Assembly: GCA_965202585.1 (NCBI GenBank)
Contig: OZ241826.1
Location: forward strand, 21,390,001-21,454,000
Source: Thalia democratica
Taxonomy: Eukaryota
Direction: 5' to 3'
DNA length: 64,000 bases
The notes beneath the pieces were generated by a model. That model ran no database searches. It had not been told where the DNA came from and saw nothing but the letters and a program-made list of their open reading frames with translations. Position 1 is the stretch's first letter. Each line of letters starts with the position of its first letter. This document shows, piece by piece, positions 1 through 63,294 of this stretch. Both the position numbers and the translations under genes were made by a program.

Positions 1-698
1 TTAGGACAATAATTATCGACTATTATCTCTAGGGAATGATTGTGCTTCGGTGGTACAGTATAGTCAGGTTTCTTAGTAATTTCTGGAAATTTAGCAAGTA
101 AGGCCTTACATCTTTCTTCTAAAGAATTTTTGCCTGAGTTTATCAGTTCGACACTGTTGATTGATGCAACTACAGGGCTGGAAAAGTCTGAAGCCACAAG
201 GAGTTTTGTCTTACGGCCTGAAATTGCTGAGCGTAATTGTGACTTGGCTGGCAGTATTTCTAATTCATTCGCTTTTAGAAAATCAAGTTCAATGATACCA
301 TAACCCCTTGACTCTGGAGTTATCCAAAAGGTATGTGTGAAATTACCTAGTTCACTAACATTAACTTCTATATCTGCACTCCCAACTGGGTGAATTACTG
401 AGTCGCCTATTCCTTGGATACTTTTGCTATTAGGGAGAAAATATTTGTTAATACCATTAGTTAAAGATTTCGGTAAAAGTGATATCTCACTTCCAGAATC
501 GATTAAAAATAACACATTTGTATTCAAATCTGAAACAAACTGAAGATTTTGTGGCAAATTATTAGGGTCAACAAAAGAGTTTTTGACCAATTTGAAAGTC
601 CAGCGCAATGGACGTTCGGGAGACTGTTTAGCAGTCTCTGTAAGAGGACTTTTAATCCCGCCATCTGATCCTCTCACTGCGACGAAGACGGGAAGTCG
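1..698 (-). CDS. pol: Ty3/gypsy pol, N-terminal part (aspartic protease), partial at window edge
   Basis: My manual translation of the -1 frame relative to gag is open from 698 to the edge (about 232 codons): ...FVSDLNTNVLFLIDSGSEISLLP...GYGIIELDFL...ALLAKFPEIT. The DSG catalytic motif is at 492-500. Confidence 0.9.
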
Positions 699-2647
699 TT
701 TTTTGTTGGACGTTGAGTTCTGATACCTGCCATTTCACACGTCCCCGGGGCAGCGCATTCATAGGCGTTATTCCCAAACTTTCTATGTCTGTGACAGAGA
801 GTACTTGAAGTCCCGTTGTTGCCTGTATTGTTGTGATTGCTATTATTTTGTCTGCCTTGATACCCATTGACAACAGGGGTATTGTTTTGGTGTGTCCGAC
901 CCTGGAAATTATCTCTAGGGTGGCCAATGACTCTAGAATCAGGAATAAAATTACAATCTTGATGGCCAAAATAGTTGTTTGCATTATTTTGGTAGCCAGA
1001 GTTTCGGTCTATATGTCTATAGCTATTCATGTGATAGTTAGATTTACTCTTTCTTTGACTTGGTCTATTAACATTGTAATTAATATTCCTTGAAGCCTCT
1101 ATACTACGTTGGTGATTGGCATCACAAATATCCCTGCAACGACGCTTAAAATTTTCTATATCTAAGCTTAAGACTTCTCTCATTTTACCTTTTAAGTGTT
1201 CAGGAGCTAGGTGAATGTATAAAAACTTTCTTAAAGTGTTAGAGTCTTTCATTTCTGCCTCCCACTTCGTGACTTCTAGTTCCAAAGCTTGGCCGTTTAG
1301 ATTGTTGAAATCAGGTCTAGGCAGAAGAACTCTACCAAGCTGACCATCCCTATTTGACAAGTAATCAATAAGACTCTTGTAACAACGTCTCCCATACTCG
1401 ACAGTAGTGTAGAAATTTCTTATATCTTTATGTGGCCAGACTGAAGTCAAAATTTGGTAGCGCAATTGAGAGTCAAAAATTTCAAGACTTCGGCACATAT
1501 CTTCAAAATAGCTTATTTCATCTCTAGGGTTAGCGGTAATATCTATCTTAATAATAGATTTAAGTTCAGAGATCCTATTGCTTAAATTGAATCCCCTATA
1601 ACCACCCCCTGGCAAGTTAAAGTCAACAATGTTATTGAAATTTGAGTCAGGCTTGGAAGTTGTCCTCATTGAGTTATTATCAATATGATTATATTCACCC
1701 CTGGCATTCACTAACCCATTGATTATTTTAGTTCTACTAGGACAGGTCTGCTGTAGAGGATCTCTGCAACTGGCTTGCATGTCAAGCTCAAGGTCATGTG
1801 CTTCTTTGTTTATTGACAACAAAGTTTTTTTTCTTTTTTGTAACTTTAACTCTTTGAGACGTTTAGCTTGACGCTCAATTTCTAACTCAACCATCTGTAA
1901 TTCTTGTTCAGTTGTTGCAGATGCTAAGTTGTCTGAGTTTATGGCTTGACTAATGTCTCGTACCTCACTGGACACTTGGTAGGGTAAACAGACCTTAGTA
2001 CCTAAGTGGGTAGAATTAGTTGTGTTGTGATACCCACCTATATTATGTATGCTTGAATTAACCTTGATGTCAGGCTGAAACTGGCCCACTATGGCTTGTT
2101 GACTGTAATTTTGAATGTGATTTATTTTAGTATTACTATTAATGGTATATGGTATATAATCATTATGGGTATCATGCATAAAGCTAGCCATGGTATGATC
2201 TGTGTGAAAATGTTGAGGGTCTTTACAACTTGTGTTAGGGTTTGGTAGGTTTTCTTTTAGTGTCAGATGTGACTTACTTTCCCCTACTATTGTTTGTACA
2301 TTGTTAATATCATTTTTAGTAAATAACAAATTGTTCTGAGTTGTGATGGCCAAATCTGAATTTGGTGAAAAACATGGATCAATTTGACTGGTATGGTAAG
2401 ACCCACTTAAACTTATGTTAGGTTGATGTGTATGACTGACCGAAAGGTCGATATTCTTGTTCTCGAGGACGCCAATGAAACCAGAGGAGGTTGGCATGCC
2501 AACTTCCAAGGGTTTGTTTAGGAGGGTAGGAGGGTCAATGGTGGACTCATGGCTAAGAGGTCTTTGGCTCTGAATGCGAGCACTCTTAGCCCGAGTTTGA
2601 ATCCTAGTGTCTGGAAGACACTCTGGGTTTGGACTGACCCGTGACAT
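674..2647 (-). CDS. gag: Ty3/gypsy Gag (657 aa)
   Basis: Long ORF with a helical capsid-like middle region and a C-terminal Cys/His knuckle (LCHRHRKFGNNAYECAAPGTC). It lies directly upstream of a protease frame and downstream of an LTR candidate. Confidence 0.85.
   Translation of the reverse strand: MSRVSPNPECLPDTRIQTRAKSARIQSQRPLSHESTIDPPTLLNKPLEVGMPTSSGFIGVLENKNIDLSVSHTHQPNISLSGSYHTSQIDPCFSPNSDLAITTQNNLLFTKNDINNVQTIVGESKSHLTLKENLPNPNTSCKDPQHFHTDHTMASFMHDTHNDYIPYTINSNTKINHIQNYSQQAIVGQFQPDIKVNSSIHNIGGYHNTTNSTHLGTKVCLPYQVSSEVRDISQAINSDNLASATTEQELQMVELEIERQAKRLKELKLQKRKKTLLSINKEAHDLELDMQASCRDPLQQTCPSRTKIINGLVNARGEYNHIDNNSMRTTSKPDSNFNNIVDFNLPGGGYRGFNLSNRISELKSIIKIDITANPRDEISYFEDMCRSLEIFDSQLRYQILTSVWPHKDIRNFYTTVEYGRRCYKSLIDYLSNRDGQLGRVLLPRPDFNNLNGQALELEVTKWEAEMKDSNTLRKFLYIHLAPEHLKGKMREVLSLDIENFKRRCRDICDANHQRSIEASRNINYNVNRPSQRKSKSNYHMNSYRHIDRNSGYQNNANNYFGHQDCNFIPDSRVIGHPRDNFQGRTHQNNTPVVNGYQGRQNNSNHNNTGNNGTSSTLCHRHRKFGNNAYECAAPGTCEMAGIRTQRPTKNDFPSSSQ
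698..704 (-). promoter_or_regulatory. -1 ribosomal frameshift slippery heptamer A AAA AAC
   Basis: The heptamer is in the correct X XXY YYZ phase of gag, 7 codons before the gag stop. A -1 slip enters the open pol frame. CCCGTC/GGCGGG downstream could form a stem. Confidence 0.75.
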
Positions 2648-2742
2648 AGTTTAATTTTACTTTAATAAAAATTATTTAATAATATAAAACACAAAATAGT
2701 TGGGATAAATTTATATACTAAAAACTTAATAGTAAACCAATT

Positions 2743-3170: not shown

Positions 3171-3660
3171 AATCAACATAGTAACATCTGCAAATAAACG
3201 CTTTCAAGTTATACACTTTAATTATTAACCTGTAAATTTTTATTATAAAAAGGAAATATTAAAGCTCACTAATATTTTATTATTTTTTGCCCCATTTGAA
3301 TGAATTCTATAGTTTATTAAACTTCTATATAAATTACTTTACTATCATGCGTAAGGAATGTTCTAAGAACTTACGTGCTTTTATCAGTTTTTACTATCCT
3401 AAAATTCTTAAAACGTAGTAAAGAGCTTTGAGTTATAAACTTTAAAATGTATCAAACATAATCATTTTTAGGTAGAGCTTCGAAAAATTAAAACGCTTTT
3501 GTTTAAAAATTTTATAAGAAAGTTATTCAGCTTGTAAGTGTCAATAGTAGATTAAGTATTTCATTTTGTAATGATTAAAGTAAAATAAGAGGGAAAGTAC
3601 GTTGGTAAAATCATAAACAAAAAAACATATTTTATATGATGATTTTATTACTTCAGCTCT

Positions 3661-5100
3661 TCATTTATTCAAGTACTGGCTCTTCAGCCTCTTTGTGAGC
3701 ACTTTCTGCATCAGCCTGCTCTGCGCTCTTTCCATTCTGAGACTGTTCTTCATCTCGTTCGCCATCATCTCCCTCCTGATGCTGTTCTCCAGCAGCTTCA
3801 TCTTGTACTGCTTGCCCTTCGACATTTCCGACTGGTCGTAGCTGCCCCTCCTCTTCCTTATCTTCAGAGCGAGCAGCTTGGCCTTCTTGGCCCTGAGCTC
3901 CCCTCTCAGACTCGACACCGACTGCGACCTCGGGCCCCGGTACACCCTGCGCCTCTTCTCCGGCGCCACCTGCGGGCTGACGTTGTACCTCGGGCTCATC
4001 GGCTTCTTGGGCGGCGTCTTGAACATCCGCCTCATCCTGATCGCCTTTGCCCTTTCCAGCTTCCTCCTCTGCGCCATCTCCTTGCCCACAAGGTCGTGCA
4101 TCTTGAGCCGGTGCTCCTCGTACGCCTGCCGGTCGCCCGCCGACCTCGCCAGCCTCTTGTTTATCCGCTGCCGGTACTCCGCCTCGCTCGCGTCCATGTT
4201 GGCCTTCAGCCTGAAAGACCTCAACCCGATTGTGAACTTCCTGAGCTGCTGCCTGTTCTCCTTTAGGTGCCACCCGACCCACTCTTCCAGCAGGTTGAAC
4301 GTCTGCGTCACGAACGAGTCCTGCCTTATCGAGCTCGCTGCCTCCACCTTGACCCACACCCTCTCCATGAGCGTGTTCCAGTAGTGCTGCCACCGCCACG
4401 CCTTCTGGTACACCTCCCTGTACTCCTTCGTCCTCAGCCTGCCCCGCTCCCACAAAAAGTCGGTCACCTCCTCCATCATCAGCTGGACGTCCCGCAGCGC
4501 GTCTCGCACGTCCTGGATCGTCACGTTGAAGAACACCTTCCTGCGGTCCCTGTCCGTGGCCGACGCGAACAGCTCCATTATGTCCTGGCTGAATCCCTGC
4601 TCGTCCTCCAGCGTCAACTCGGGCCGCTTGCTCCGCGCCCTCAGCTGATCCAGATCCTGCAAGCGGAGCTGCAGCTTCCCGTTGATGCACCCGATCAGCA
4701 GTCGCTGCTCGCGGCTCCACTTCAGGTTGAACTCGGGGAGCTTGTAAACGACCCTTTTCTTCGGCGATTGCTTCTTCTCGGGAGTATTCTTCTTGGGGGT
4801 CTTCTTCTTGGGCGTCTTCTTCTTGGGCGTCTTCTTTACGGGCGCCTTCTTGGCGGGCGCCTTCTTGGCGGGCGCCTTCTTCTTCTTCTCGGGGAACAGC
4901 GGTTCGCTATGCGCTTCCCTTTGGCTCAGAAACTTGATCCACCTGTAGTTCTTGCCCTTGGACGCCATCGTCGCCTCGACCATCTCGTTCCACAGTTTCT
5001 CTCCCGGGAAATACCCGCTCTGCTCGCACAAGTCCTCGTTGGGAATCACGAGCCGCTGCTCCGGCCGCTGGTGCCTCTTGGATCCCGGTGTCAATGACAT
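3661..5100 (-). CDS. Intronless K/R-rich protein of unknown function (479 aa from first ATG), H1-like repeats
   Basis: Long ORF with strong GC3 bias in AT-rich DNA. The ORF-track start at 5118 is TTG; the first ATG (5100, context AAAAAC-ATG) is preferred. AATAAA lies 11 nt after the stop. Paralogous to 12617-13468. Confidence 0.85.
   Translation of the reverse strand: MSLTPGSKRHQRPEQRLVIPNEDLCEQSGYFPGEKLWNEMVEATMASKGKNYRWIKFLSQREAHSEPLFPEKKKKAPAKKAPAKKAPVKKTPKKKTPKKKTPKKNTPEKKQSPKKRVVYKLPEFNLKWSREQRLLIGCINGKLQLRLQDLDQLRARSKRPELTLEDEQGFSQDIMELFASATDRDRRKVFFNVTIQDVRDALRDVQLMMEEVTDFLWERGRLRTKEYREVYQKAWRWQHYWNTLMERVWVKVEAASSIRQDSFVTQTFNLLEEWVGWHLKENRQQLRKFTIGLRSFRLKANMDASEAEYRQRINKRLARSAGDRQAYEEHRLKMHDLVGKEMAQRRKLERAKAIRMRRMFKTPPKKPMSPRYNVSPQVAPEKRRRVYRGPRSQSVSSLRGELRAKKAKLLALKIRKRRGSYDQSEMSKGKQYKMKLLENSIRREMMANEMKNSLRMERAQSRLMQKVLTKRLKSQYLNK
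4772..4890 (-). repeat. 15-nt coding tandem repeat (KKAPA/KKTPK units)
   Basis: Encodes KKKKAPAKKAPAKKAPVKKTPKKKTPKKKTPKKNTPEK. Confidence 0.95.
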
Positions 5101-5161
5101 GTTTTTTGTTTTGTCCAAACTCGTCTCCTTGCACTCTTTGGCTACTTGTAGAAACAGTTTC

Positions 5162-5190
5162 TGCCTCTGCGAATTTCAAAAAACGTCACA
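5162..5190 (-). promoter_or_regulatory. Upstream module shared by the two paralogs (copy 1)
   Basis: Plus strand reads TGCCTCTGCGAA-N9-ACGTCACA, 62-90 nt upstream of the ATG. Matches 13562-13592. Confidence 0.6.
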
Positions 5191-7884
5191 GTCGTTGGGA
5201 AATGTTTTGAACACGGAAAGGAAAAAAATTGCGCCATTATCCGTAGACTGATGCATTTTGAGCACGGTTGTCAGTTCGTGCTTTTTCAAAGGGTTTTAGT
5301 TTTTGAAACATTGTAAAAGGTTTCAAGTTAATAAAGTCTCTGGTAAACACTACTTAGAGTGTTATGTTTTTGAAATTATCTTCAAAGTAAATTGTTGCTT
5401 GTCGTTTGAGTTTTTTTTTCTAATGTTTGGAAACAGTCCCCACTGTAACTTTTTGTGCGTACAACCCTTTTCAACTGTTAACACCTCGTTTTAAAACAGT
5501 CTTCACGTTTACGCTTTCATACAAGTTTGTTTATTTTTTAACTAGTCTGTTTATTTTTCTACTTTGCCTAGTTATGTTGCTTACAAGGCTGTAAGTGATT
5601 TTAAACGTTACTTTATTGATTCCTTTTGTTACTTGGTTTAGTTTTTTAGCTTAAAACTATATACTTTATGTTTAATTTCTTTACTTTGATAAGAAACAGT
5701 GAAACTAATAATTAAGCATGTAACTTTAGCGGTTTGAAAATCTAACTTTTAGAATAACCTAAACGAGCAAACCAATAAACAATGCATACAATATTTAAGA
5801 TTGATCTTAAATTATTTCATAAATTAATCACCAGTGAGAGTTAAACTAAACTGAAAACGCGAGAAAATTATTCGGAAAAAAAATCGCTATGTGAGAATTA
5901 AAACAATAATTTTAAGGTATAATAGACTTGTTTGGTATAATAAATTAAACAAGAATTATTATAAATACAAATGATAAATGTTAATGGGTTTTTAAAACCT
6001 TTTTTAAAGTGATAAGAGAAAACTGGAGAAAGTATATTATGAGTATTTAATTAAAGGTAAATTCTAATTGGTATTATTAAAAAGTTGGTAGTTAAATATA
6101 ATTTACCATTATGAAAAGAAAAGTCAATCGAAAATTACAATATATGTAAACTTATGATTGATATAACAAAAAAGCTGGGCATTTAGGTGTAACTTTTAAG
6201 CTAGTTACACCATGCATTGTAATTTAACTTAAACCTAAAATGAAAATATTTAGAAGAGGAATTTACTATCAGCTTATGTTGTCAAAAATGAACAAAAAGG
6301 TAATATAGATTTACAGAATTAAAAAAGCTTAAACTAAATTTGTTTGTGTAAAAGTTTACAATGATTCATATCAAGTAAACTTTAATAACTAAGTAATAAA
6401 GGTAAAGTATTAGAAAAAATAACTACTTATAATCTTTATACTAAATTACTGATAAAGAAAAGAAGAAAATTAAAGACTTTAACACGAAAAAAATTAAAGT
6501 AATATATTTCAAATTTGAAACAACTATTTCAGTATATTTAGAAATTTGAGACAAGTATTGTAAAATGTGCAAAACTAAAAATCTTTTATTTACAAAGACT
6601 AAAAACTAAGTACAATTTCAGCTAATAAAGTACAATTTAGTCAAATTTAGTGCTGCCTCTTCGAAATTTATAAAAACGTCATAATTATAAACTGTTAGAA
6701 AAATTGAAAATCTTATGAAAAAAAAATCCGTTATTTTTTATAAACTAGCACAATTTCTGCTCCAACTATTCTCTTACTCTATATAGAATATAAAATTAGA
6801 GTTTTATTCTCTGTTATATAAGTGCGACCATCTTGACAATTAAACAAGCTAATGTTGACTGTAAAACAATTCGACAATCATATAATTTTTTCATGAAGCT
6901 TCTAGCTTCGTTTACATTATAAATTAAATTGAAAAGCGGGAAATGCAGAAATAAACTTAAAAAAAATAAAAAATTTCCTACCAATATTTTCACACAACTT
7001 TATGGGGAAGAAAATAAGTTTCGGGAAAATTATTAAAACGCCTGGCTGTGAAAAGGGACTCGAAGAACAACTAGTCAAACGGGTTGAAGAAGGATTTTGA
7101 AGTTACCATAAAAAATATTTCGTTTCGAAAGCAGCAGAATCTTTAGCTGTTTACAAAACTGAGAAATGGAAAAAATAAGAATATACATAAGTAGAACAAA
7201 TCTGTTCTTAGAACATACTTGTATCGTGTGCGGAAAAGTCAAATCTAATACAAAGCTGAGTATATAACAATGTCACTAAAGTGGGAAACATTTTAAAATG
7301 ATAAAATCCGTTAGTGCCTGCAAATTAGTTAAAATACTTTTTGCCATCAAAGCACTTGTTTTTTGAATACAAGTTGATTAACAATTCTAATCCTTAAGTT
7401 ACACTTTACAAATAGTTAACATTAAATTTTTTTGTACTTATAAAGTAATATGCCGTGCTTATAAAACATTTAACTGTATTTATAATTAGCTTTAACTGTC
7501 ATTAATACTTAAGAACAAGTAATTTTTTTGTTTAGTTATAAATAGATAAAGATTTATAAGACTAAACTAATTCATTTAGATGTTTTAACTTTATTAAAAA
7601 TGCAATCAAAAACTTTAAAAGTAAAAACAGTTTTTAACACAGAATTATTCAGTCAACATATAACAATTCCCTACTAAGCATATCTAAACAAGTGCATAAA
7701 AATGTAACGACAGTACAGTGCAATAAGTAAAGAAATTTAACTTTTTGAATATGAGCTATATAGCTACAGGTAACTAAAAAGTATAAATATTTTGCTAAAA
7801 ACTAGGAATACATCACAAATAAAATCAATTTTAAGTATGTTTTCAAACTTCTGTAGTAAGTTTTCTAATCTAAAGTACTTAAGT

Positions 7885-8059
7885 CAGTGCTTCTGAACCT
7901 TTTTCTAGTGGCGGAACCCTTTTTCAAAGTTCAAATTTTCCGAGGAACCCCTTATTTTAATTTTACATAAAATGTTTAATGAAATAATTGTTCTTTTTTA
8001 AATTTTGAAAGGCTTCGCGGAACCCTAGGGTTCCGCGGAACCCCATTTCAGAAGCACTG
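7885..8059. mobile_element. hAT (Charlie-like) MITE, 175 bp
   Basis: 13-bp TIR CAGTGCTTCTGAA/TTCAGAAGCACTG, perfect 8-bp TSD ACTTAAGT (7877-7884, 8060-8067), and an internal 22-bp palindrome at 8016-8037. Confidence 0.92.
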
Positions 8060-8719
8060 ACTTAAGTGATACAATGCTGAGTAGAGAGACATTATTTTTA
8101 GGATGTTTCTGAGTTTCATTTGTAAATTAAAAATACTTCTAATAAAAAAGTTTTAAGTTTTAGTCTAAAATTAAAATAAAAGTAAAGATTAAAAATTATT
8201 GAACAAAAGCTACTTATATGCTCTAGTTGACTGAAATTGAAGTTAGTATTTTTTATGTACAAAAGAATTTAAATAAAGTAAAACGAAGGGTATGGTTTGT
8301 TTACATTAAGTTTAGATATTTTCAGCGACTAGCAACAAACCTTATCATAAAAATTAACTATTCGCAAAGTATAGACAAAGAGTTGAAAGTATTGCATGTA
8401 AGAAACAAATTACTTCAAAAGAGTTAAGTAAAATGGCTAACATAAGTACGAGATATTGTCTTATGCTTTTAGGAACAAAGTATATCAGTTTTACTTAAAT
8501 AATAATAGAAACTGTTTTACTTGTAGTGAACTAACTATTATAAACTTAAAATACATAAAACAAAGTAGTACTGATGCTGGGTTTATTTTTGATTGAAACC
8601 GTTCTTTACAAAAAAAATAATTTATCTCGACTGACCTAATCAATGAGTTATTAGCTTATAATGAAATTTAAAAGAAAAATATTTAGATTTAACATTGTCA
8701 ACGACTCTTTCTATAAATT

Positions 8720-9205
8720 CTTCTCTTTTTGCTTCATTACTTTTGCCCTGCCTGTCCACCTGAATCTTGCTTTTCCTGCCAGTAGTCCTGCTTGTCGTAC
8801 ACTTGTCGCCTTGATATTTTCCTGAAGCAGCTGACTTGATTACTATCTGATTGTCATAATAGTTGTAGATTAGCTTTCTAAAGTAAAACTTGTTTTTTTA
8901 TTTTTTATAAGAAATAGAAACTATTTGGTTTTATTAATATTAACAAACCAATAGTAAACATTATAATTTGTAACAAACAAAGAAAGTCGTTTAATTTGCA
9001 GTTTTGGCTTCTCTTAGACAATATTCACTTTAGTTTCTTTGACTTTGCACCTGCATTCTGTACAACTGCCTCTCTTGAAACCTCCTCCTATGCTCCTGCT
9101 ACGGTAATCTCCAACTTACTGTACTTTTGTCGCGCAGATATTTTCCTGAAGCGCTTTTACTGACTTCTATCTGATTATCATTAATCGGCATTGATTAGCT
9201 TTTTC
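8720..9205. repeat. Diverged direct duplication, period about 324 bp
   Basis: Shared core GATATTTTCCTGAAGC...CTATCTGATT.TCAT...GATTAGCTTT at 8813 and 9137. Confidence 0.75.
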
Positions 9206-10392
9206 ACTGTCGGCTGCTTTAAAGTCACACAAAATGTTTATGAGTTTATTTTAAATATTACAATTAGTCCAAAAAAATTAATACTGTATGTTGAAAGACT
9301 AATAATATAAATAAAAATAAAGCCAAGTTAAAAAATTGTAGTAATTAAGTTTTAGTTAGTTTAAATAGTAACCAGTATAATGAATTGCATTAAGTATGTA
9401 TAATCACAATATAAACTAATGTAAGCAAACTTTTAACGAACTCCAGAGATGTTAAGTAATGAATGACAAAACGTTTATAAATGTTTCATTTACATAAACA
9501 TAATGTATTGTCAATTAAGACATTAAATTTAAAAGTGAAGACGAATTTTAACCATTTTATTGCCAAAGCTGTATTGATCTTTAACTTACTTATCTATGAC
9601 TTGCACGGTATTTTATTTGCTATTTTCATATATTTAGCTGAAAAAACACAGTTTCTTTTGTCAAGTTAAAGTTAAGTACCAACTGATCGAAATATTTCTG
9701 TGTTGGCAAGATGACGTTTACAAAACTGATAAAAAAACATAATTTATTTAGATAAGCAAACTTACTTTTCTATACAACTTTATGGCTCCGTTGTTACCAA
9801 TGATTTTTTCAATTCGATATTTTTTTTCAAATCTGCCACAACCACAACTTTTTCATTTAATTTTTGCAGTTTTATTAATTTGAAAATACTTGAATAACTT
9901 ATCAAATACAGCTTCGATTTTTTTATGAACTTTCTTTAAAAAGTTTTGTAGAAATTGTTTTGAAACTTTGATTAATACTTGCTTATTCATTACAACAAGT
10001 TTTGTCCATTGAATGCTGTATGAAGTTTAATGAAGGACAAAAAAGACGATCAAAATATTAGGTCATAGGATCTGGTGCACGAAGAACCTTTTGGTTATCG
10101 ATTCGTTCACCAAAGATAGTTTTAATGTGTTGTCGAGGACCAGGGTTACTAAATTAATACAATAGCGGTAACCGATTTAAGTTTTAAAAGTAATTAAAAC
10201 CATTTAAAGGACTTCATATAAAGAAAACTATTAAAAAAAAAGTATAGAATTACAAGTGAATTTATATATGATATATTATAAAAAATACAACTTTTGAGTT
10301 TTAAAGTAAGACAAACGTAATTTTTTCTAACTTGAGCACATAGGCTAAAATCAGAAATTTTAACTAAACAGGCAATTAAAAAAGCACACAAG

Positions 10393-11472
10393 ACTCAGTA
10401 CGAAGACGACGGAGATAAAGTCAGGCCAGATGCATAACAACCGTCAGAAAAGGTAGATGGTCGTAGAAGAAGCTGGAAAAGATGAAGGCCAACAAAGAAA
10501 ACCGAAGAAAGTATTGGATCTAGAGCACTATTCACTTAGAAGGAGCAGCTTGCAAAAAAAAAAATATTTAATCTAAATTTAAATTGGAGGTAACGTAAGA
10601 TATCTAATAGAGTGAAACATTGTTTCATGATAAAAATCTTTGAGTATAACATTTGTAAACTTAGTTTGATCAAGACAATTCGTCAATAAAAAAACTTTAC
10701 CAAAAAAAAACTGAATCAAGCTTTATAATTTATTATCAAAACTATCAAACAAGTCAAAAAATGTGTTAATAAACTTTATTATTGTAATTTTTAGTTTTTG
10801 ATGCTTTTATTAAAATTTGAATGCTGTAATAAATAGAGGTTACTAGATTAAATATTAGAAGTAACAGAAAAAGTCAATTTAGAAAACTTTATTTAAGGTA
10901 GACTATAAACAGTAAAGATTTAAAGTTTAAGTTATGTTCTGTAAGGGATATTTTGTAAAAAACACAGTTTCTGCATTTTCAGTTTGATAAAATAAGTTTT
11001 TTTAAGTTGAGCACTTAGCTTAAATTACAGTTTTTAGTAAAAACATGTAATTAAAAAGAAGACGAAGTTCAGTTAGAAGATGACAGCAAAAGAGTTAGGC
11101 CAGGTGTAGAACAATCGGGCGAAAAGGTATCTAAAAAACCGATGAAGGCCAACAAAGAAAACTTAAGAAAGTGTTGGATCTAAAGCACTATTCACTTTAA
11201 GGAAGCTGCTAGCAAAAAAAAAGTAAAGTTTTAATCTAAACTTAAGTTGAGGTAGCGTAAGATTTTTAATAGAGTGAAACATTGTTTCATAATAAAACTT
11301 TTTGAAACACAATATTTGTAAACATAATCTGGATCAAGTTAATTAGTTAATTAGCAATTTTTACAAAAATAACTAAATCAGGGTTTATAACTCATTATCA
11401 AAACTACCGAATAAAGTCAAAATATGTTAGTAAACTTTATTTTTGTCTTTTTGATTTTTCAAGCTCTTATTT
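10393..11472 (+). pseudogene. Two tandem decayed copies (period about 670 bp), probably relics of the 479-aa gene family in inverted orientation
   Basis: The duplication is clear (e.g. GATGAAGGCCAACAAAGAAAAC and TAATAGAGTGAAACATTGTTTCAT occur in both copies). Homology to the gene rests on short, ordered peptide matches only. Confidence 0.45.
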
Positions 11473-12616
11473 ATTATCAAAATTATAAAGTAAAGCATAA
11501 AAATTTTAAAAATACTTTGTTATAGTCTAATTTAGATTTTTAAGTTTACTAATGTAAATGTAAATAGTGCTGCAAATCAGGTCCGTAAAGATTTACTTTT
11601 AGCAAATTGGTCAGTACCAGTTAAGACTTCTTTTTTAGCTATATTATTATATATAGTCTTTTTTTAAGTAACTAACAAAACTTTGATAATTAATAACGAA
11701 AATATAAAGAGGATAAATAAATTTAAAACAAAAACTAAAATTCACAAAAACATTATATTAAGTTATATTAAGGTAATTTAACTTTTTTTAATTATTACAT
11801 TATTTGTTATATATATATTTTTTTTTTGGTTTTTAGGAGTTTTATAATTGTAACCATAACAACATTGTTCTATTACTACTACTATATAAAATTGTTAGTA
11901 TTAAAATAACTATAATATGATAATAATATTATAGCCTGTTTTAATATATGCTGATGTCATATTAATGTTAGATTTTTTTTAAGCTCTTTCTGTTTTTATT
12001 ACCTCTAATAGTTTAATTTTTATAGTCTTTAAAGACGGTTTTAGTATGTTTAAAATGTTAATACAAACTTTGTTTCATTAAATTAGTTAATATAAAGTAT
12101 GATTAAACTTACATTTTAAAGAATATTGTTATTAAAACGTTAGAAAATTAGTTTTTATTGATAGACTAATAAAAGTTATGTTTATTATTTCCAGACAAAG
12201 TTTATTTTTAGCATATTAATATAGATTTTCTATATACTAATACAGATTTTTAAAGCTTCTTGAACTTAAAAAAAGACATAATGAAGGTCATATGTAAAAG
12301 TTAATTTAAAGTCATAAAAAGTCATGTAAAGTAATTTCAAAAATTATTTTTCAGCTTAGGTAGGTATAATTTATTAAATGGTCAAACTTTGTAAAAATAA
12401 TTAAGATTGAATATAAAGTAATATATTAGTAGTATTACGTTAAAAATTTTAAGTTAAGTATAAATTATAAAACTAATTTAAAAAACAATTTGGAAAATTT
12501 CTACTAAATCAACGCAAGATTAACAGGCAACTAAAAGATTAAGAATTTAGAAAAAAAGAACAACGAATTTATGGCTGTTTTTGCGCGTTCAGCACGCTTT
12601 TATTATTTTGCGCTTT

Positions 12617-13468
12617 CTAATACTCGTACTCTGGGTACTCCTCGTGGCGCCTCCTCTTGCTCGAGCGCCTCCTGCTGGCCGACCTCCTCCTCCTGCCCTG
12701 GCTGGGCGACGGGATCTGCTCGTAGTAGGTCTCAAAGTCGGGCCCGAACTGCTTCACGTCCTGGTACCTCCGCTGCAGGTTGATGTGGGCCGCCCACTCC
12801 CGCCTCCACGGCCTGATGTTGCCCTCGAGGTACTCCTCGATGAAGCCGAACGTCTGGCACACAAAGTTCCTCTGGTCCTCGTCCTCCGGCTCCTCCTCCG
12901 GGATGTCGTGCCAGATCCTCTTCCTGGCCTCCACCCACGTGTCGGTGATCCTGTTGGCGGTGCGCCTCAGCCCCTTCAGCTCCTCGGTGCTGCCCTCGTT
13001 CTCCGGGTAGGTCGCGGCGAACATCCACGCCTCGTTGAAGTAGCTGTCCAGGATGCCGATCTCGTCTCTGATCTCGGCGATCGTCTTCCTCAACACGGGC
13101 ACTTCCTGGCCGGCCGGCGCCACGTCCCTGCCGGTCACCTTCAGGTACAGCTGGAAGACGGCCTGGCTGAACTCGGGCAGGTGCTCCAGGTTCCACTCCT
13201 CGCCGGTGGTGGCCAATATGTCGGCCTGCTTGGCGCGGTACTGGTCCATGTCGTCGCGGAGGGTGGCGATCCGCCTCTGCACCTCGCCCTGCTCCTGCCC
13301 GCTGTAGATGTACGCGTTGTTGCGGATCTGGCAGCCGACGAACGCCTGGTTGGCCTGCGCGAAGTTGATCCACCGCTGGTCGTTGTCGATGGTCTCGGAC
13401 CGGTACATCATGCGCTTCCACGGTCCCTCGCGGATCCTGATCTGCTCGACCGGGTTGATTTGCGGCAT
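12617..13468 (-). CDS. Intronless protein of unknown function (283 aa) with Arg/Ser-rich C-terminal tail
   Basis: Extreme GC3 bias, ATG context CAAAG-ATG, AATAAA 12 nt after the stop. Paralogous to 3661-5100. Confidence 0.88.
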   Translation of the reverse strand: MPQINPVEQIRIREGPWKRMMYRSETIDNDQRWINFAQANQAFVGCQIRNNAYIYSGQEQGEVQRRIATLRDDMDQYRAKQADILATTGEEWNLEHLPEFSQAVFQLYLKVTGRDVAPAGQEVPVLRKTIAEIRDEIGILDSYFNEAWMFAATYPENEGSTEELKGLRRTANRITDTWVEARKRIWHDIPEEEPEDEDQRNFVCQTFGFIEEYLEGNIRPWRREWAAHINLQRRYQDVKQFGPDFETYYEQIPSPSQGRRRRSASRRRSSKRRRHEEYPEYEY

Positions 13469-13561: not shown

Positions 13562-13592
13562 TGCCTCTTCGAAACGGTGGACCTACGTCACA
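13562..13592 (-). promoter_or_regulatory. Upstream module shared by the two paralogs (copy 2)
   Basis: Plus strand reads TGCCTCTTCGAA-N11-ACGTCACA. The first block matches 5162-5173 at 11/12 positions. Confidence 0.6.
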
Positions 13593-16500: not shown

Positions 16501-19184
16501 TGTTACTTATTTGATAATGAAACTAAACACAAAGCATAAGCAGTTTTAAAGAAAAATATAGTTGATGCCGTTAAAGTATTTAGACTGGTTTAAACTCGTA
16601 CGGTGTGATTTGAAATAAATTTATATAAAAAACTTACAGTTTGAATCGATCAAAATGTACTTCAAAAGTTTACTTCATATATTTTACTTTAAGCTTAAAA
16701 AGGTTATTTTTTGACTCAATTTCTATTATTAAAGTAAAAAATAAAGAAAAAAGGCTAGACACTGTTTTATTTACACAAAACCACAGTCAGAGATTATAAG
16801 TTAGTTTTATTTTAGACAGCTTAAGTGATGTGGAATTACATCATTACAAAAAGATTAGCTTTAAATTCTAATTGGTTCGAACTGGGAAAAGTTAAAAGTT
16901 CAAGGTGGCAAGATTTAAGTGAGAAAAGGTCAAATAAAGAGTAGACAGTCACATTATCGAGTATTTGATCGAAAAACTTTTGTTTCAATTTTGCAAATCA
17001 ACTTTTACGTAATAAATGCTTTTTTTTATCTTCATTTAAACTTTAGTTATTTGTAGTATTTATTAGATTTTCGAGACAAGTCACGCTTATCATTAATCAC
17101 AATAATTTTCAATATGATACAGTGCATTTTGAAGTTTTAGGCATGTTTTTATTATGTCATTTCCTGAAAAAGATTAAAAACAAAGTAAACATATTAGTTT
17201 GTTTTTTATCAAAATCAAGGCAAACTCAATAAAGCTTTTGTATTGGTTTTATACAATATGCAGCAATGTTAACCGCACCATTAATGCGTTTAAAATTACA
17301 TTTGTAAATTTCACAGCTGAGTTGCAACAACTTGTATCGATTGTAGCGAGTCATCGCTTCTCTCGCATTGAGTTCTCTCGTTTAAAAGTTGGCGGGAAAA
17401 AAGAGTACAAAACGCGTAAACAAAAATTACGCTGAAATGTCGTCGCTTCGAGTTGTGCAATGGTCTGTGTTGTTTAGCTGTTTTGTTAAATGTGAAGTTT
17501 GTTTTGTGCTTTTTGCTACATTTATTTTTGAAATGTTTAGATCTTGGCTTTTTAAAAAGTTTTTAATTTAATTTGCATAAAATATTACCGTTTGATAGTG
17601 ACTTTAAATTTATAAACAGTTTAATCAGAGTATTTAGATAAAAAAATCAATTTAAGTTTTCGTTATTTATTTATCTAGAATTAACTTTTTTTTAAGACAG
17701 ACTTATTTCATTTGACAAAAAACTTAATGTGCTACTGATAAAAGTAAATCAAGTAACAGAAAGCTAATAAGTGCGTAAAATGATGAAAAATAATTATACC
17801 ACAAGGCAAATTAAACTAAATTAGTTATTCATTTTCGGAAAATATAACTAAAATTTCAAAGATAACTTTCCTAATTACTATTAAAAAAAAAGTACACTTT
17901 GTTTGAAACATTTTAAGTTGTTTTTCAACACTCAAAAGAGAAAAAAAAAATCAGGAGCTAATCAAAACAATAAAGCTTTTCTTGATGATAATCTAAACAC
18001 CATAAACGAAACAGTTCTGATTAACTTTCTTTCTAAAATTAACACAATTTTTGTTATTTATAAACTTAAACAATTTATATTTATAAATTGCAGCTTTTAT
18101 AACTTCAAAGACTAGTACACTACTATCGTTGTTATCACAATATTAAGTTAGTTGTAATTTAAGCTATTTTATAAGAAGTATTTTATTTTAGTAGAATCCT
18201 GAAGTTATAATCTATGGCTTAGAGTACATTGCATAAAATATATTATGTGCTAACATATACTACTTATTATAATTTAAGGTGCTTGAGTCACGCAGTTTAA
18301 TCCGAGAGATTATATACTTTTATTGCGATTTGATAAACTGTACAACTTCGATTTAACATAAAAACGTTTCTTGGAAATGCTGATGGTGAAGTAAGAGTCA
18401 TAAAACCTCCAACTTGTCAATACTTTATTTACTAGCACTTAAATGAAGTATACAATGTCGTAAGGCAGCTGTCTTTCTTGAATTATTAATTATTCAAGTG
18501 CTCTAAACTAAACTGAAATAAATATTTACAAAAACCACGTTTTTTAACATAAGTTTAAAATGTAAAGTTTTCAGTAAAACTTTTATTCTATTTATTTTTA
18601 TGTTTAAAAAAAAGCACGATTGTTTTTAGGACAAATGTGAAGTAACTGTAAAAGCCAAAAATTTTTTATCATATAACTGATAGACTAATGAGTACGGTGT
18701 TAAATTACTCTGATCTTAAACTTTTAAAGCTTTAACTTAACATACAAGCTAAGAAGTGTTTTATTTATCAGTAAGAAATAAGTGATTTAAAGTAAAAGAT
18801 AAAAATTTTTACTTTTTTTTATCGTAAAAGATTTTATTTTTGGTTTTGTCTCTGTAGAGTTCTAAACAACGTTTAAACTGAATCAAAATTTCCAAATTTT
18901 CCAGAAGCACAACACAGAATATTGACTGCTGAAATATATACAGCCGATAACTGACCTTGGTTTCAAATGACTATAAAAAGCAAAAATTAAGTCGACTAGT
19001 CCGCGCTCAAAACCAGCGTTCAGCCGTTTAAACAAAAAAAACAAAATCCAAGTTCAGCAATAAAAACTAGAGTAGAAAAAAAATCGATTTTATTTATTTG
19101 AACGATCGAATCTAAGCTCGTACCAGCAAAACGGATTAAGACTGCTTCTAAACTCGGGGTTTTTTTTTCTTCAAAACAAATATC

Positions 19185-19320
19185 GTGACGTCACCATCTG
19201 TGTCGTAATCTCGGCATTGACCTTGCGTGACGTCACAGTAACGGAAAGCGTCCACGCGGGGGCGGTGTTGTTCGGTTTTGAAGTATAAATAGATGGTTCG
19301 CCGACCGAGAGACTTTTCTT
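19185..19320 (+). promoter_or_regulatory. Pol II promoter, probably of the NCKX gene
   Basis: CpG-rich island with two GTGACGTCAC CRE palindromes (19185-19194, 19227-19236), a GC box GGGGCGG (about 19258-19265) and TATAAATA (19284-19291). Confidence 0.65.
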
Positions 19321-24100: not shown

Positions 24101-27100
24101 TATAATAAAATTAATTTATAACACAAGACATTTATGAGATGACAACTAGTTTCAGAAAAAAAAACCAGATACACTATGGTATAAAGCATACACAGTTTTA
24201 AACTATGATGTTTCTTATATGTCATGTAAAACTAGCAACTTCCTCCGATTTTATTCAGTTGAAAACAAGCAGACTAAACATATCCATTGATATAGAGTTA
24301 TGATATTATATACACAGTACCCATACATATTGTACACGCATTTAATATTAAAAAATATTCTAGTCAGGTAATAACAAGCAAGCTTTAGAATGACTTGATA
24401 TTTTACACTATGACATTATATTCACACATATATATTATATATTGTATTATAAGTTCTCCATAAAAAAAAATTAATCAGGTTATAACAAGCAGACTGAAGA
24501 GATCACTAGATTTTAACGATAATATACACTATCATACACCCCTAACATATTCCACACATATTTACGCACATATACATTGGTTATCATTACAAACTGTTTT
24601 GTTTAGGTGATTACGAGCAGGCTGAAGATATCACTTGATGTCGCCGATAATATTTACCATCATACACCCCTAATATATTCCACACATATTTACACACATA
24701 TACACTGGTTATTTTTACAAATTAATTTCATTCAGGTGATTACGAGCAGGCTGAAGATATCACTTGATGTCGCCGGCGCAACTTTCATGGCGGCGGGAGG
24801 ATCGGCTCCAGAATTGTTTACTTCAGTTGTCGGAGTTTTCTTCGCCAAGAGTGACGTTGGTGTGGGTAAGTAGAACACTTTTGTGTAATTTTTTACCTAA
24901 ATCAACTATTGGAGTTTTTTTTTGCTAAGAGTGATTTTGGTGTAGGTTAGTAAAAAAAGCTTATGTATATTTACAATTGTAGTTGTAGTTATTTTGCAAA
25001 AAGTGAATTCGAAGTAGGTGTGTTAGAGGGAAATGTGGTACAAAAATAATTAACACAGTATGTTGGTTATAAAATCCAAGTCTATTTTAAGACTAAAATA
25101 TTTTTCACACAACAATTGACTCTTACTTTATTTTATATATTATCGTTTATCATGGTTTATTTGTTTATATAAGCCTAATAAAACTCATAATTATTAATTA
25201 TATAAACTTGTAGACAAATTTTAAGTCAAATAACACTTAGGCTCTTTTTACGAGTAGTTATTTGAATTTTAACAAAAACAAACCAAAACACAAAGATATT
25301 TTTATTACTAAGCAAAGCTGTTTTGGGACAATTAGATATTTTTTATTATGAAAATTTTAGCCATAAAACTTTGAAATTTAAAGTTAAATATCAAGAATCT
25401 TTATTACTTACTTAATAAAGGACTGTGTTTTTGATAATAAGCAATACTATACTAAATATTGAATTTACTAAATACGATTTGAATTAAAATTTACAAAACC
25501 GTATTGAAAGCAAACTTAGTTCATTGAAACATTTAATTTAGTTGATAACTATTTTTATATCTGATAATATTTGTATCAAGTGTCTTAATTAGTATATCTC
25601 TAACCGTATAAAGTTTTACAACGTTATTGAGATTGTAGTCTTAAAAGTATATGATCCATTCAAAAAGAAATTCAGGCCGAGGATTAAACAAGGTAAAACT
25701 TCAAAAACAAAAACTGCAATTCCGTTTAACCCAGAAACCTAAAACTTTCATAATTTTTTATATGAAGTATGCAGAGTCGTGTTGCATAACGCAATGTGGC
25801 TTTGAAATCGATAACTGGCACTATGACGTCATTTGCTAATGAACCGTGCGAGTTAATTCTTGAAATCCAAGTAATAAGCCGCATAAATCTTTGTCATGCT
25901 AACCAGATTATTTCAGTACTGACAGTGGATTATGCTGCTTGAAAAAGTAATACCAGCACAGTATTATTTTTAAAATTTTAAACTAAGCTGATATCTAGGT
26001 TCTAGGTAATAGCTCGAATTTTAAGTTTTTTGCTTGTACTTACCATGTGTTTGTTATGAACTTGTTAAACTAAGTTTTTATATTTAACTAAGAGTTATTA
26101 AATATTATACTTCATTATTTAGTATATTCTACTAGACATAACGAGTTATTGTTTGTTTGAAAAAACAAACGTTTTTTATGTATTTTAGTACGCTTAATAC
26201 ACTTACAAACTGTAAATCTAGCTGAGAATAATAAACAAAAAGTCAATAATAATAACTTTATCAAATACCCATTGCATAATATTTCTGACTTAATGTAATC
26301 ACTTTATGTACAAAACTAAATCGAGCTGTGAACTAAAGGCAGGTTTACAGAAACACTACACAAAAATAAATAAGTCAGTGCATAAAGTTCATGCTTTTTT
26401 GTAACAATACTTTATAAAAAGAATGTTGCAAACTTTACTCTACATTTTCACAACTCTGACCACAATTTTTATCAAAGTTTGATAAAAGGAAGTGTAACAA
26501 AGTTCAAAAACTGTGAAAACCCTTTTGTCTATCACTGTATTAAAACTAGGGTTTCAAAGCTATATCACAAAAAAAATATTTTAATCTCTTTTAACGACTT
26601 TAATAGAAGTTTAATAAATATTTTAAATACAAGTGAATAATGTAAAGTAATAAACAACCACTAGTGAAAAAACAAATTAGTAATTATATATATACGAAAC
26701 TTAGTGTTAGAAAACAGAAACATTTTCTTCACATAAGTTTTTCCTAACCTCAACACCTTTCAGGCACAATACTCTGGTCTAAGGTGAGTTATTCGAAGCA
26801 ATTAAATAAGTTTTTTTCAAATTCAAACCAACCAACAACTTTAACTAATAAACATTTACTCCAGGAACAACCTCAAATTTATATAGTAAAACAGCAAACA
26901 CTAAAAAAGAAAACTACTAGTTCTCCATATAATTTTTATCACACCTCAACATTTCCAGGCACAATAGTTGGCAGTACAGTGCCACAGTAGACTAATATGC
27001 GTCGATTTACCAAATAGTTTTAAGTACTAACACTAGTGCTGTATATTACAACTAAACTTCTAAGAACTGAAACACTTAAAACAAAAAACAAGTATTGTGC

Positions 27101-61900: not shown

Positions 61901-63294
61901 TTGAAAGTGTAAGAAATTATCCAATCAGAATAGCCATTGATTTGCAGCTGACGCGTTTTTTTTTTACGTCACTTATGTTTTTATAGTAAATACTTGTATC
62001 CATTGTAATTTAGTTTTAAAGTCCCACTTTTGAAATTCGTCTTGAGATACGTTTGTGTTTGTCAAGTAACTTATTCATTTATTTACTTATTTTATAATTA
62101 ATTTTTTTATTACAACTAATTTCTGATACATTGATCCACAAACAAAAATTTTGGTAAGTTTAATGCAAACGGTGTAACTCTTGAGCCCACCTTTTTTCCA
62201 AAAATTAAATCGTTCAATGTCAAATCCTGTGATGCACTTCAATAAAAACTGACAACGCTTGAGCGACTTAACCTACCATATAAACATTTATATCAAGATT
62301 CCACTTCCCACCAAAGAAAAAGTTCGTAGTAAATAAATATTAAATATTAGCCGAATTGATTATTTACTCATACCCTATAGTTCTAAATCACAACAAAGTA
62401 CCAATTCAATTTTTTTTCTTTTACGACATAAACTTAGTGTATCAAGTGTTAATACAAGTGTTTTATCTGTTTACGTGTAGACCATGTAAATTAATTGAAA
62501 GATATTGCATGTCTGAAATTAATTTATATCAGAAATTGTTTAGTTTCAATTGTTTGCTTGATCATAAATATCTACTTTTAAACGATTTATAAAAAACATT
62601 CGAAGTTTACTTTTATGTACTATAAGTACGAACGTACTATAAACTTTTAACAAGCATATTTAATCACAGGTCCTTGAAAAAAGTGAAAAAGGATGTTCAT
62701 CTTGCACAAATTTATAAAGACAACCTGAAGTGTTACAATAATGATTTAACCATGAAACCAAATGCAGTGAAAAGATCAGGTCTGATCAACGAGACAGGAA
62801 ACGGTGTCGAACAAAACGGTGTTACTAGACGCAACCAAAACCAAATTAACGATTTAGTTGTTCAAGAAGGCATGGAAGTTGAAAATCTAACTGCAGAAGG
62901 TCTAACTGCAGATCAGGTTGCTAACAATGATGGCAATGATGATCATCAAGATTCTGACATCTCATCAGTTGCTACCGTCAGTGAGGCTGGTTTAGTAGCT
63001 AACAGGAAAAGAAAACCAATCGTGTTGAAGCTTAGGCCTATAAAGAATAGAAAGAAGTCATCTTATGAAGTTGTTTCTGCTTCGGACGACGAAAAAATTG
63101 CGGACGATGGAGTTGAAGAAGCTCAACAATACCTTCATCGACAAGCTGGGAACGGGCATGACTCAGGTTTAGAAGGTCACAATGAGCCAGGAAGGCGTGG
63201 AGTCATCGATCAGCAAATAGCTGAACAGCAGAACAGTAGCGCTGGAAGAAGCAGAAGAAAGAAAAGACGAACAAAGTTTTTTGGGTTAGTTTAA
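58968..63294 (+). CDS. MBD-like domain protein, 3 coding exons, 278 aa
   Basis: join(58968-59036,60996-61138,62670-63294); GT-AG introns, phases 0 and 2, open frame. Spliced sequence GFWLAHKHRRTDKWNNWQYKYTSPAGKKLRSLKKV resembles the MBD signature YxSPxGKKFRS. Acidic low-complexity tail with basic clusters. Confidence 0.75.

What the first reader, a model, noticed from the sequence alone, without database searches (positions are those of the whole stretch)
3661..13468. Two intronless genes form an unrecognised paralog family: shared helical domain with different basic modules
By-eye alignment of the 479-aa and 283-aa proteins gives collinear blocks: LWNEMV/PWKRMM, YRWIKF/QRWINF, LIGC/FVGC, LQDLDQLRAR/RDDMDQYRAK, ELTLEDEQGFSQDIMELFASATDRD/EWNLEHLPEFSQAVFQLYLKVTGRD, TIQDVRDAL/TIAEIRDEI, WNTLMERVW/WVEARKRIW, and QDSFVTQTFNLLEEW/QRNFVCQTFGFIEEY. 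Both genes are on the same strand, intronless and extremely GC3-rich, with AATAAA 11-12 nt after the stop. I do not recognise the domain. A helical core plus Lys- or Arg-rich segments suggests nucleic-acid packaging. Candidates are a novel sperm/germline chromatin protein family or a domesticated viral nucleocapsid-like protein (inference).
Basis: partly seen in the sequence, partly recalled or inferred. Interest (0 to 1): 0.8.

Follow-up and report, generated by a model that had tools for sequence, protein, structure and literature searches.

The report
New helical protein family, marine animal
Two neighbouring intronless genes in a very AT-rich marine animal genome (possibly a salp) are true distant paralogs of a small protein family that matches nothing known; what the family does is not shown.

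Summary
Gene A (3664-5100, minus strand, 479 aa) and gene B (12620-13468, minus strand, 283 aa) share a domain of about 230 aa. BLASTP gives E = 6e-8, and Smith-Waterman scores 119 against 35-40 for shuffles (z = 12-15).

A third protein, P0005, matches both genes. A profile of B-type proteins aligns collinearly to A once A's Lys-rich insertion is removed.

The family matches nothing in Pfam, PDB sequences, Foldseek (PDB or viral) or IMG/VR. A profile search of 1.84 billion proteins found only five true relatives, all from ocean plankton metagenomes or metatranscriptomes.

The genes look like host genes, not recent viral imports:
- Their extreme GC3 (0.90 and 0.97) exaggerates the codon bias of the neighbouring host NCKX gene (GC3 0.75; RSCU r about 0.69).
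- All family members share a promoter module, with a third, orphan copy at 6651-6690.

Each basic module is a local tandem repeat: (A/T)PKKK x7.6 in A and an SRRRS-type unit x2.9 in B. Gene B is net acidic overall (pI 5.5), which weakens a simple DNA-packaging reading.

My best guess, by inference only, is nuclear, chromatin- or nucleic-acid-associated helical scaffold proteins. The sperm and viral-capsid ideas remain untested or unsupported. The organism may be the salp Thalia democratica, on composition alone.

The parts
3661..5100 (-). Gene A coding sequence: 479 aa plus stop, intronless ORF, GC3 0.90, pI 10.6
   Evidence: ortholog P0002 (68% identity, Tara metagenome contig L002)
4900..5001 (-). 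Gene A residues 34-67: N-terminal piece of the shared domain (W..M...RWIKF motif)
   Evidence: B-type profile HMM hit, i-Evalue 1.5e-3; joins the main hit when the K-rich insert is deleted
4771..4884 (-). Gene A Lys-rich module: 15-nt tandem repeat x7.6 encoding (A/T)P(A/K)KK pentapeptides. Together with the residues just downstream (to residue 115) it carries five S/TPxK motifs. It is an insertion inside the shared domain, and the ortholog has fewer units.
   Evidence: repeat; motifs at residues 91-115; insertion; 15-aa length difference in P0002
4147..4752 (-). Gene A residues 117-318: main body of the shared all-helical domain
   Evidence: profile hit 150-318, 2e-14; AF2 helices in the same order as B
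3664..4146 (-). Gene A residues 319-479: basic C-terminal extension specific to A-type proteins (KRRR and RKRR clusters)
5162..5190 (-). Gene A promoter module: TGTGACGT, then 9 nt, then TTCGCAGAGGCA
3644..3649 (-). Gene A AATAAA, 11 nt after the stop
12617..13468 (-). Gene B coding sequence: 283 aa plus stop, intronless, GC3 0.97, pI 5.5. The shared helical domain covers about residues 16-250.
   Evidence: ortholog P0001 (78% identity) on a cDNA-like contig L001
12647..12697 (-). Gene B Arg-rich tail: 18-nt tandem repeat x2.9 (RRRRSASRRRSSKRRR), followed by an acidic and aromatic C-terminus (EEYPEYEY)
13562..13592 (-). Gene B promoter module: TGTGACGT, then 11 nt, then TTCGAAGAGGCA
12599..12604 (-). 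Gene B AATAAA, 12 nt after the stop
6651..6690 (-). Orphan third copy of the family promoter module (TGACGT, 10 nt, TTCGAAGAGGCAGCA) with no ORF downstream

Best explanation
Shown: A and B are genuine host genes. The B lineage is transcribed; no transcript of A or its ortholog was seen. They belong to a small, lineage-restricted, previously undescribed protein family. The family is built on an all-helical domain of about 230 aa (five main helices) and driven by a family-specific promoter module.

Inferred mechanism:
- The helical domain is a self- or hetero-associating scaffold. It has no conserved catalytic-type residues.
- The repeat-born basic modules take the proteins to the nucleus and onto nucleic acid.
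- In A, the (A/T)PKKK array (S/TPKK-type, like linker-histone and sperm-histone tails) and the basic C-terminal extension bind DNA or chromatin directly. This may be tuned by CDK-type phosphorylation.
- In B and the other B-type proteins, the short Arg cluster acts mainly as a nuclear or nucleolar targeting and phospho-regulated tail on an otherwise acidic domain. B-type proteins are therefore more likely partners, chaperones or competitors of basic proteins than DNA condensers.
- The extreme but host-type codon bias points to very high expression in some cell type. Which cell type is unknown; germline is only a guess.
- The B-type architecture is probably ancestral. The A-type arose by duplication, repeat insertion and C-terminal extension.
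For: Paralogy.

Transcription: relatives lie on mRNA-sized contigs. L001 is 929 nt. L007 is 900 nt and carries a template-switch oligo remnant at its 5' end. P0004 comes from a Tara metatranscriptome run.

Coding constraint: GC3 far exceeds GC1 and GC2 in the called frame only. All indels against the orthologs are in frame. dN/dS for B is 0.44.

Host origin: the host NCKX exons have GC3 0.75. RSCU correlation is A/B versus NCKX 0.68-0.69, and versus the retrotransposon gag -0.42 to -0.55.

Shared promoter: the module is present in all six available upstream regions. TCGMASAGGC occurs 3 times in the window against 0.06 expected.

Structure: AF2 predicts all-helical domains with the same helix order in A and B.

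Basic modules: they are tandem repeats. A has five S/TPxK motifs and B has RRRR and KRRR clusters. SPKK/SPKR repeats are linked to dense sperm DNA packaging in sea urchin and Hydractinia histones (PMC5011920).

Conserved positions are T, E, F, W, R, Q, F, R only, with no catalytic-looking set.
Against: - There is no direct evidence for nuclear localisation, nucleic-acid binding, oligomerisation or tissue of expression.
- The AF2 models are low confidence (pLDDT 54 and 59), so the fold is not established.
- Gene B is net acidic.
- Gene A against its ortholog gives dN/dS 0.86-1.1. That could mean weak constraint rather than rapid adaptive change, although dS is probably depressed by codon selection.
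- No transcript evidence was found for A-type genes; P0002 comes from a metagenome.
- The TGACGT element is not family-specific: full CRE palindromes also sit in two other promoter-like regions of the window.
Confidence: 0.45

Rival explanations
1. Sperm nuclear basic proteins: a lineage-specific replacement or companion of histones and protamines that condenses sperm chromatin.
For: - Intronless, tandemly placed, with repeat-born Lys and Arg modules.
- S/TPKK repeats as in sperm-specific histones.
- Fast protein evolution (dN/dS 0.44-0.86), as reported for sperm nuclear basic proteins in Drosophila (abstract of PMC9917458).
- Very strong codon bias, implying high expression.
Against: - B is acidic overall, with only about 15% K+R; A has about 25% K+R. 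Both are far below protamine-like composition.
- Both proteins are large with a folded acidic or neutral domain.
- No tissue data exist.
- The relatives were found in bulk plankton metatranscriptomes, which says nothing about testis.
Confidence: 0.15
2. Domesticated viral or retroelement capsid/nucleocapsid-like protein: a helical assembly domain plus an Arg-rich nucleic-acid-binding tail, as in hepadnavirus core proteins.
For: - The architecture of B-type proteins (helical domain plus a C-terminal RS/Arg cluster) resembles the hepatitis B virus core protein. This is my own knowledge, not tested here.
- The genes are intronless.
- A BEL/Pao-like element lies 1 kb away.
Against: - No Pfam capsid, Gag or core match in any of seven members.
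- No IMG/VR relative.
- No BFVD or PDB fold match at E<=0.001.
- No zinc knuckle.
- Codon usage is host-like and opposite to the neighbouring retroelement gag.
- The family has its own conserved cellular-type promoter and AATAAA signals.
Confidence: 0.07
3. Cytoplasmic or cytoskeletal proteins. For example, microtubule-associated proteins in which Lys-rich repeats bind tubulin, and the acidic-aromatic C-terminus (EEY-like: EEYEY, VDYYY) is a ligand for CAP-Gly-type domains.
For: All five B-type proteins end in an acidic residue followed by tyrosines directly after the Arg cluster. Lys/Pro-rich repeats also occur in microtubule-associated proteins (own knowledge).
Against: The resemblance is at motif level only. 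The Arg clusters fit a classical nuclear localisation signal. A-type proteins lack the tyrosine C-terminus.
Confidence: 0.1
4. Chance ORFs in GC-rich islands: not real genes.
For: The GC-rich islands carry long ORFs in several frames.
Against: - Only the called frames have GC3 of 0.90-0.97.
- The orthologs keep the frame through several indels.
- Relatives occur on cDNA-like contigs.
- A profile built from the pair and their two orthologs retrieves distant relatives with the same architecture.
Confidence: 0.01

Closest known systems
Linker histone H1 and sperm-specific histone tails with S/TPKK repeats
   Same: Gene A carries a tandem array of (A/T)PKKK units with five S/TPxK motifs. The composition is close enough that a bacterial protein with an HC2 histone-like repeat scored weakly against it (P0003). 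SPKK/SPKR repeats are associated with dense DNA packaging (PMC5011920).
   Different: There is no winged-helix globular domain and no histone fold, and no Pfam hit at all. The repeat is inserted in an unrelated helical domain. Only the A-type proteins have it.
Protamines and protamine-like sperm nuclear basic proteins
   Same: The Arg/Ser clusters (RRRRSASRRRSSKRRR) arose by repeat expansion. The genes are intronless and the proteins evolve fast.
   Different: The Arg cluster is only about 16-25 residues of a 283-aa, net acidic protein. Sperm expression is unknown.
Hepadnavirus core protein (helical assembly domain plus Arg-rich C-terminal domain)
   Same: The order of parts in B-type proteins is the same: an all-helical domain followed by an Arg/Ser-rich tail. 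The comparison itself comes from my own knowledge.
   Different: There is no sequence, profile or fold similarity to any viral protein. The promoter and codon usage are those of the host.
Generic antiparallel helical bundles (spectrin repeat, three-helix coiled coils)
   Same: These are the best, non-significant Foldseek matches of the A-core model.
   Different: E-values are 0.5 or worse, TM-scores are 0.3 or lower on the query, and the models are low confidence. This is not evidence of relationship.

Membership tests
Linker histone H1/H5 | Winged-helix globular domain (Pfam Linker_histone) | tested here: not met
   No Pfam hit for A, B or any of seven family members, even at E<=5
Linker histone H1/H5 | Lys/Ala/Pro-rich tail with S/TPxK motifs | tested here: met
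   Gene A residues about 70-116: 15-nt repeat x7.6 and five S/TPxK motifs. Absent from B.
Protamine / protamine-like sperm nuclear basic protein | Small protein dominated by Arg/Lys (roughly half of the residues or more) | tested here: not met
   A has 118 K+R of 479 residues (25%). B has 42 of 283 (15%) and is net acidic.
Protamine / protamine-like sperm nuclear basic protein | Presence in the sperm nucleus or spermatid-specific expression | not testable with these tools
   No tissue-resolved expression or proteomic data are available. Only bulk plankton metatranscriptome contigs were found.
Retroviral/LTR-retroelement Gag (capsid and nucleocapsid) | Capsid-domain profile match and/or a CCHC zinc knuckle | tested here: not met
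   No Pfam match. A and B each have only two Cys and no CCHC pattern.
Viral core or nucleocapsid proteins in general | Sequence or fold similarity to a viral protein | tested here: inconclusive
   No IMG/VR relative and no BFVD match at E<=0.001. The query model has pLDDT 54, so a fold-level negative is weak.
New family defined here (B-type architecture) | Shared helical domain with the motifs FSQ, TGR[DE], T[IL]xx[VIM][RK]xE and QxxFVxxTFxLxEE, followed by an Arg cluster and a C-terminus of acidic residue plus Tyr | tested here: met
   Seen in window B, P0001, P0005, P0006 and P0008. Gene A and P0002 keep the domain but not the tail.
New family defined here | Upstream module: (T)(G/T)ACGT, 9-14 nt, TTCG(A/C)A(G/C)AGGC | tested here: met
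   TCG(A/C)A(G/C)AGGC is in all six upstream regions available, from the window and from the environmental contigs; the ACGT part is visible in four, because contigs L002 and L005 begin too close to the gene to show it. TCGMASAGGC occurs 3 times in the window against 0.06 expected.

The most novel reading that the evidence does not exclude
The family is a new class of chromatin architectural proteins, restricted to thaliaceans or at least to one lineage. The A-type would be a linker-histone-like DNA binder built on a novel helical oligomerisation domain, and the B-type its acidic, nucleus-targeted partner. Both would be expressed at very high level in the germline from a dedicated core-promoter element that takes the place of a TATA box. 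That would make it an independent invention of sperm or germline genome packaging in an animal whose genome is 75% A+T.
Probability: 0.12. Interest if true: 0.7.

Novelty: categorically new. Interest (0 to 1): 0.45.

Why it matters
If the family is what it appears to be, it is a protein domain with no detectable relative in Pfam, the PDB or 1.84 billion clustered proteins outside a few ocean-plankton sequences. It also shows two kinds of basic module arising by tandem-repeat expansion on the same scaffold.

It offers a clean example of how lineage-restricted genes gain charge modules, and how codon selection can push GC3 to 0.97 in a 25% GC genome.

It also provides a short, testable promoter element shared by a gene family in an ecologically important but molecularly unstudied group of animals.

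The functional claim (chromatin or nucleic-acid binding) is unproven, so the present value is mainly descriptive.

Tried and rejected
- Pfam on A and B, and on all seven aligned members: only noise, every hit below its cut-off.
- Profile searches against PDB sequences: nothing below E = 0.2.
- Foldseek of both AF2 models against PDB, and of the B model against BFVD: no match at E<=0.001. The top hits are generic helical bundles.
- IMG/VR scan with the family profile: no relative.
- JGI metagenome contig scan: alignment A3 was too divergent to give a pattern. A4 gave 59 pattern matches but no relatives.
- P0007, a repeat-rich hypothetical protein of the mirid bug Apolygus lucorum, scored E = 4e-5 in the profile search. 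hhalign gives probability 0.2%, so I rejected it as a relative.
- P0003, a bacterial sigma factor with Lys-rich repeats, is a low-complexity match only.
- A small hairpin just after AAUAAA in B-type 3' UTRs looked conserved by eye. Folding energies are not better than shuffles (z from +1.3 to -2.1), so I dropped it.
- TGTGACGT as a spermatid CREM-type signal: rejected as specific evidence, because full CRE palindromes also occur in two unrelated promoter-like regions of the window.
- Foreign origin inferred from GC content: rejected, because the host NCKX exons are also GC3-rich and share the codon preferences.
- More family copies in the window: tblastn found none.
- Naming the organism through the retrotransposon gag: all relatives are unnamed metagenome proteins.
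Full report
**What is in the sequence**

The window is very AT-rich, about 25% GC outside genes, and contains no N. Two sharp GC-rich islands of about 61% GC sit at 3.6-5.3 kb and 12.5-13.6 kb. Each holds one long minus-strand ORF:
- Gene A, 3664-5100, 479 aa from the ATG at 5100.
- Gene B, 12620-13468, 283 aa.

**Is the similarity real?**

Yes.
- BLASTP gives E = 6e-8 (23% identity over 213 aa).
- The Smith-Waterman score is 119. A thousand whole-sequence shuffles give mean 39-40 and maximum 75. Shuffles within 20-aa windows, which keep local composition, give mean 35 and maximum 66. That is z = 12-15.
- The environmental protein P0005 matches both genes by tblastn (2e-7 to B, 5e-5 to A).
- A profile built only from B-type proteins hits gene A in two pieces: residues 34-67 (i-Evalue 1.5e-3) and 150-318 (2e-14).
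- Deleting A's Lys-rich stretch (residues 67-116) turns these into a single collinear alignment, A 34-268 at 47.4 bits.

The Lys-rich segment is an insertion inside the domain.

**Relatives**

Word-indexed searches of 5.8 billion proteins found one close relative of each gene. P0001 is 78% identical to B, and P0002 is 68% identical to A.

An exhaustive HMMER profile search of 1.84 billion cluster representatives returned six proteins with E<=1e-3:
- P0002.
- The fragment P0004.
- P0005 (312 aa, 1.3e-12).
- P0006 (198 aa).
- P0008 (270 aa).
- P0007, from the bug Apolygus lucorum, which hhalign rejects at probability 0.2%.

All true relatives come from Tara Oceans or other marine metagenome and metatranscriptome assemblies. 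None has a name or a Pfam domain.

L001 (929 nt) and L007 (900 nt) are mRNA-sized. L007 starts with what I recognise, from my own knowledge, as the end of a template-switch cDNA oligo (ACATGGGG). So at least the B-type genes are transcribed.

L008 is a P0005-like copy with a frameshift.

**Family architecture**

B, P0001, P0005, P0006 and P0008 share three parts in order: the helical domain, an Arg cluster, and a C-terminus of an acidic residue followed by tyrosines (EEYEY or VDYYY).

A and P0002 keep the domain. They add the Lys-rich insertion and a basic C-terminal extension of about 160 aa, and they lack the tyrosine end.

Positions conserved in all seven sequences are T129, E146, F150, W178, R184, Q199, F207 and R222 in B numbering. 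Nothing suggests an active site.

Both basic modules are tandem repeats at the DNA level:
- A 15-nt unit x7.6 at 4771-4884, encoding (A/T)P(A/K)KK. The ortholog has fewer units.
- An 18-nt unit x2.9 at 12647-12697, encoding the SRRRS-type tail.

A has five S/TPxK motifs and is very basic (pI 10.6, net +63). B is net acidic (pI 5.5, net -6) apart from its tail.

**Known families**

None matches.
- Pfam finds nothing above threshold for any member.
- Profile searches of PDB sequences give E>=0.2.
- AlphaFold2 with the seven-sequence alignment predicts all-helical domains with the same helix order. In B the helices are 57-88, 98-111, 130-153, 161-185 and 197-241. In the A core they are 30-57, 68-81, 95-119, 124-148 and 164-216.
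- Confidence is low (pLDDT 54 and 59).
- Foldseek against PDB and BFVD gives nothing at E<=0.001.
- An IMG/VR scan found no relative.

**Host or foreign?**

The contrast between 61% GC genes and a 25% GC background first suggests an import, but the evidence points to host genes.
- Exons of a sodium/calcium-potassium exchanger (NCKX/SLC24-like) gene on the plus strand (24.7-42.6 kb) have GC3 0.75, and up to 0.87.
- Relative synonymous codon usage of A and B correlates with those exons (r = 0.68-0.69). It anticorrelates with the neighbouring retrotransposon gag (r = -0.42 to -0.55).
- The GC-richness stops at the ends of the coding sequence and is concentrated at third positions. That fits selection on codons (high expression) better than regional biased gene conversion. 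This step is inference.

**Shared promoter module**

All six available upstream regions (A, B, L002-L005) share TCG(A/C)A(G/C)AGGC. An ACGT-containing element lies 9-14 nt upstream of it in the four contigs that reach that far. TCGMASAGGC occurs three times in the window against 0.06 expected.

The third copy, at 6651-6690 on the minus strand, is a near-perfect module with no ORF downstream. It may be a relic of a lost copy or a distal promoter.

In L005 and L007 the transcript 5' end lies 31 nt downstream of the element, which is where a TATA box would normally sit. This rests on one data point and is inference.

The TGACGT part is not family-specific. Two other promoter-like regions of the window carry full TGACGTCA palindromes.

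**Selection**

The Nei-Gojobori method gives these values:
- B against L001: dN 0.148, dS 0.333, ratio 0.44.
- A against L002: dN 0.107, dS 0.125, ratio 0.86, and about 1.1 in the core.

Strong codon selection depresses dS, so these ratios are upper bounds. All indels are in frame. The proteins evolve fast, A especially.

**Source organism**

No relative carries a taxon name. A comparative study of 38 tunicate genomes reports that the salp Thalia democratica has the lowest genomic GC (25.3%, 790.7 Mb), with coding GC almost 17 points higher (PMC13746493). That matches this window and fits the plankton origin of every relative. It is a lead based on composition only.

**Interpretation**

Shown:
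- The two genes are real and form a paralogous, host-encoded family; transcript evidence exists for B-type genes only.
- The family is lineage-restricted and has a novel helical domain.
- The basic modules arose from tandem repeats.
- The family shares a promoter module.

Inferred:
- The proteins are nuclear. The Arg clusters and KRRR motifs look like localisation signals.
- A binds DNA or chromatin through its S/TPKK-type array. Such repeats are linked to dense DNA packaging in sperm histones (PMC5011920).
- The helical domain mediates self- or hetero-association.
- B-type proteins, being acidic, are more likely partners or regulators than condensers.

The sperm-chromatin reading remains possible; I put it at about 0.15. 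The viral-capsid reading has no positive evidence; I put it at about 0.07.

**Verdict**

Function is unknown, and I see no sign yet of an unusual mechanism. Lineage-restricted orphan families are common.

Noticed in passing
window 3-2650 (-): A BEL/Pao-like LTR retroelement. It has a 657-aa Gag-like ORF (677-2647) that is Asn-rich, has a C-terminal Cys/His knuckle-like motif and no Pfam hit. The start of an aspartic protease (FLIDSGSE) follows in the next ORF (3-734). A 97% identical Gag (P0009) and several 51-70% relatives occur in ENA marine metagenomes, so the element is multicopy in plankton DNA.
   Followed up: partly
window 24736-42596 (+): Exons of a sodium/calcium-potassium exchanger (NCKX/SLC24-like) gene with introns of 3-10 kb. 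I recognised it by eye from the alpha-repeat motifs ([19 protein letters not shown]). Exon GC3 is 0.75 against about 25% GC in the introns.
   Followed up: partly
window 6651-6690 (-): An orphan copy of the family promoter module (TGACGT, 10 nt, TTCGAAGAGGCAGCA), 1.5 kb upstream of gene A. The downstream sequence is AT-rich and has no ORF of 45 aa or more.
   Followed up: yes
window 19170-19300 (+) and 28150-28230: Promoter-like regions with two full CRE palindromes (TGACGTCA) each. The first also has a GC box and TATAAATA, and may be the NCKX promoter. CRE sites therefore look like a common promoter element in this genome.
   Followed up: no
window 10481-11547: A tandem duplication of about 660 bp of AT-rich non-coding sequence; the copies are 71-88% identical.
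   Followed up: no
L008 416-1386: An environmental P0005-like family member whose N-terminal and C-terminal halves are in different frames. This is either a frameshift (pseudogene) or an assembly error.
   Followed up: partly
P0004 (Tara metatranscriptome run ERR1719477): A 128-aa fragment nearly identical to P0001 but lacking 30 internal residues between two GAGGAG-type repeats. This is more likely a reverse-transcription or assembly artefact than splicing.
   Followed up: no
window 62626-63291 (+): An ORF of 206-222 aa, 40% GC, with no Pfam match. It was not examined further.
   Followed up: no
whole window: The composition (about 25% GC with much GC-richer coding sequence) matches what PMC13746493 reports for the salp Thalia democratica (25.3% GC, 790.7 Mb). 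This is a lead to the source species, not a demonstration.
   Followed up: partly
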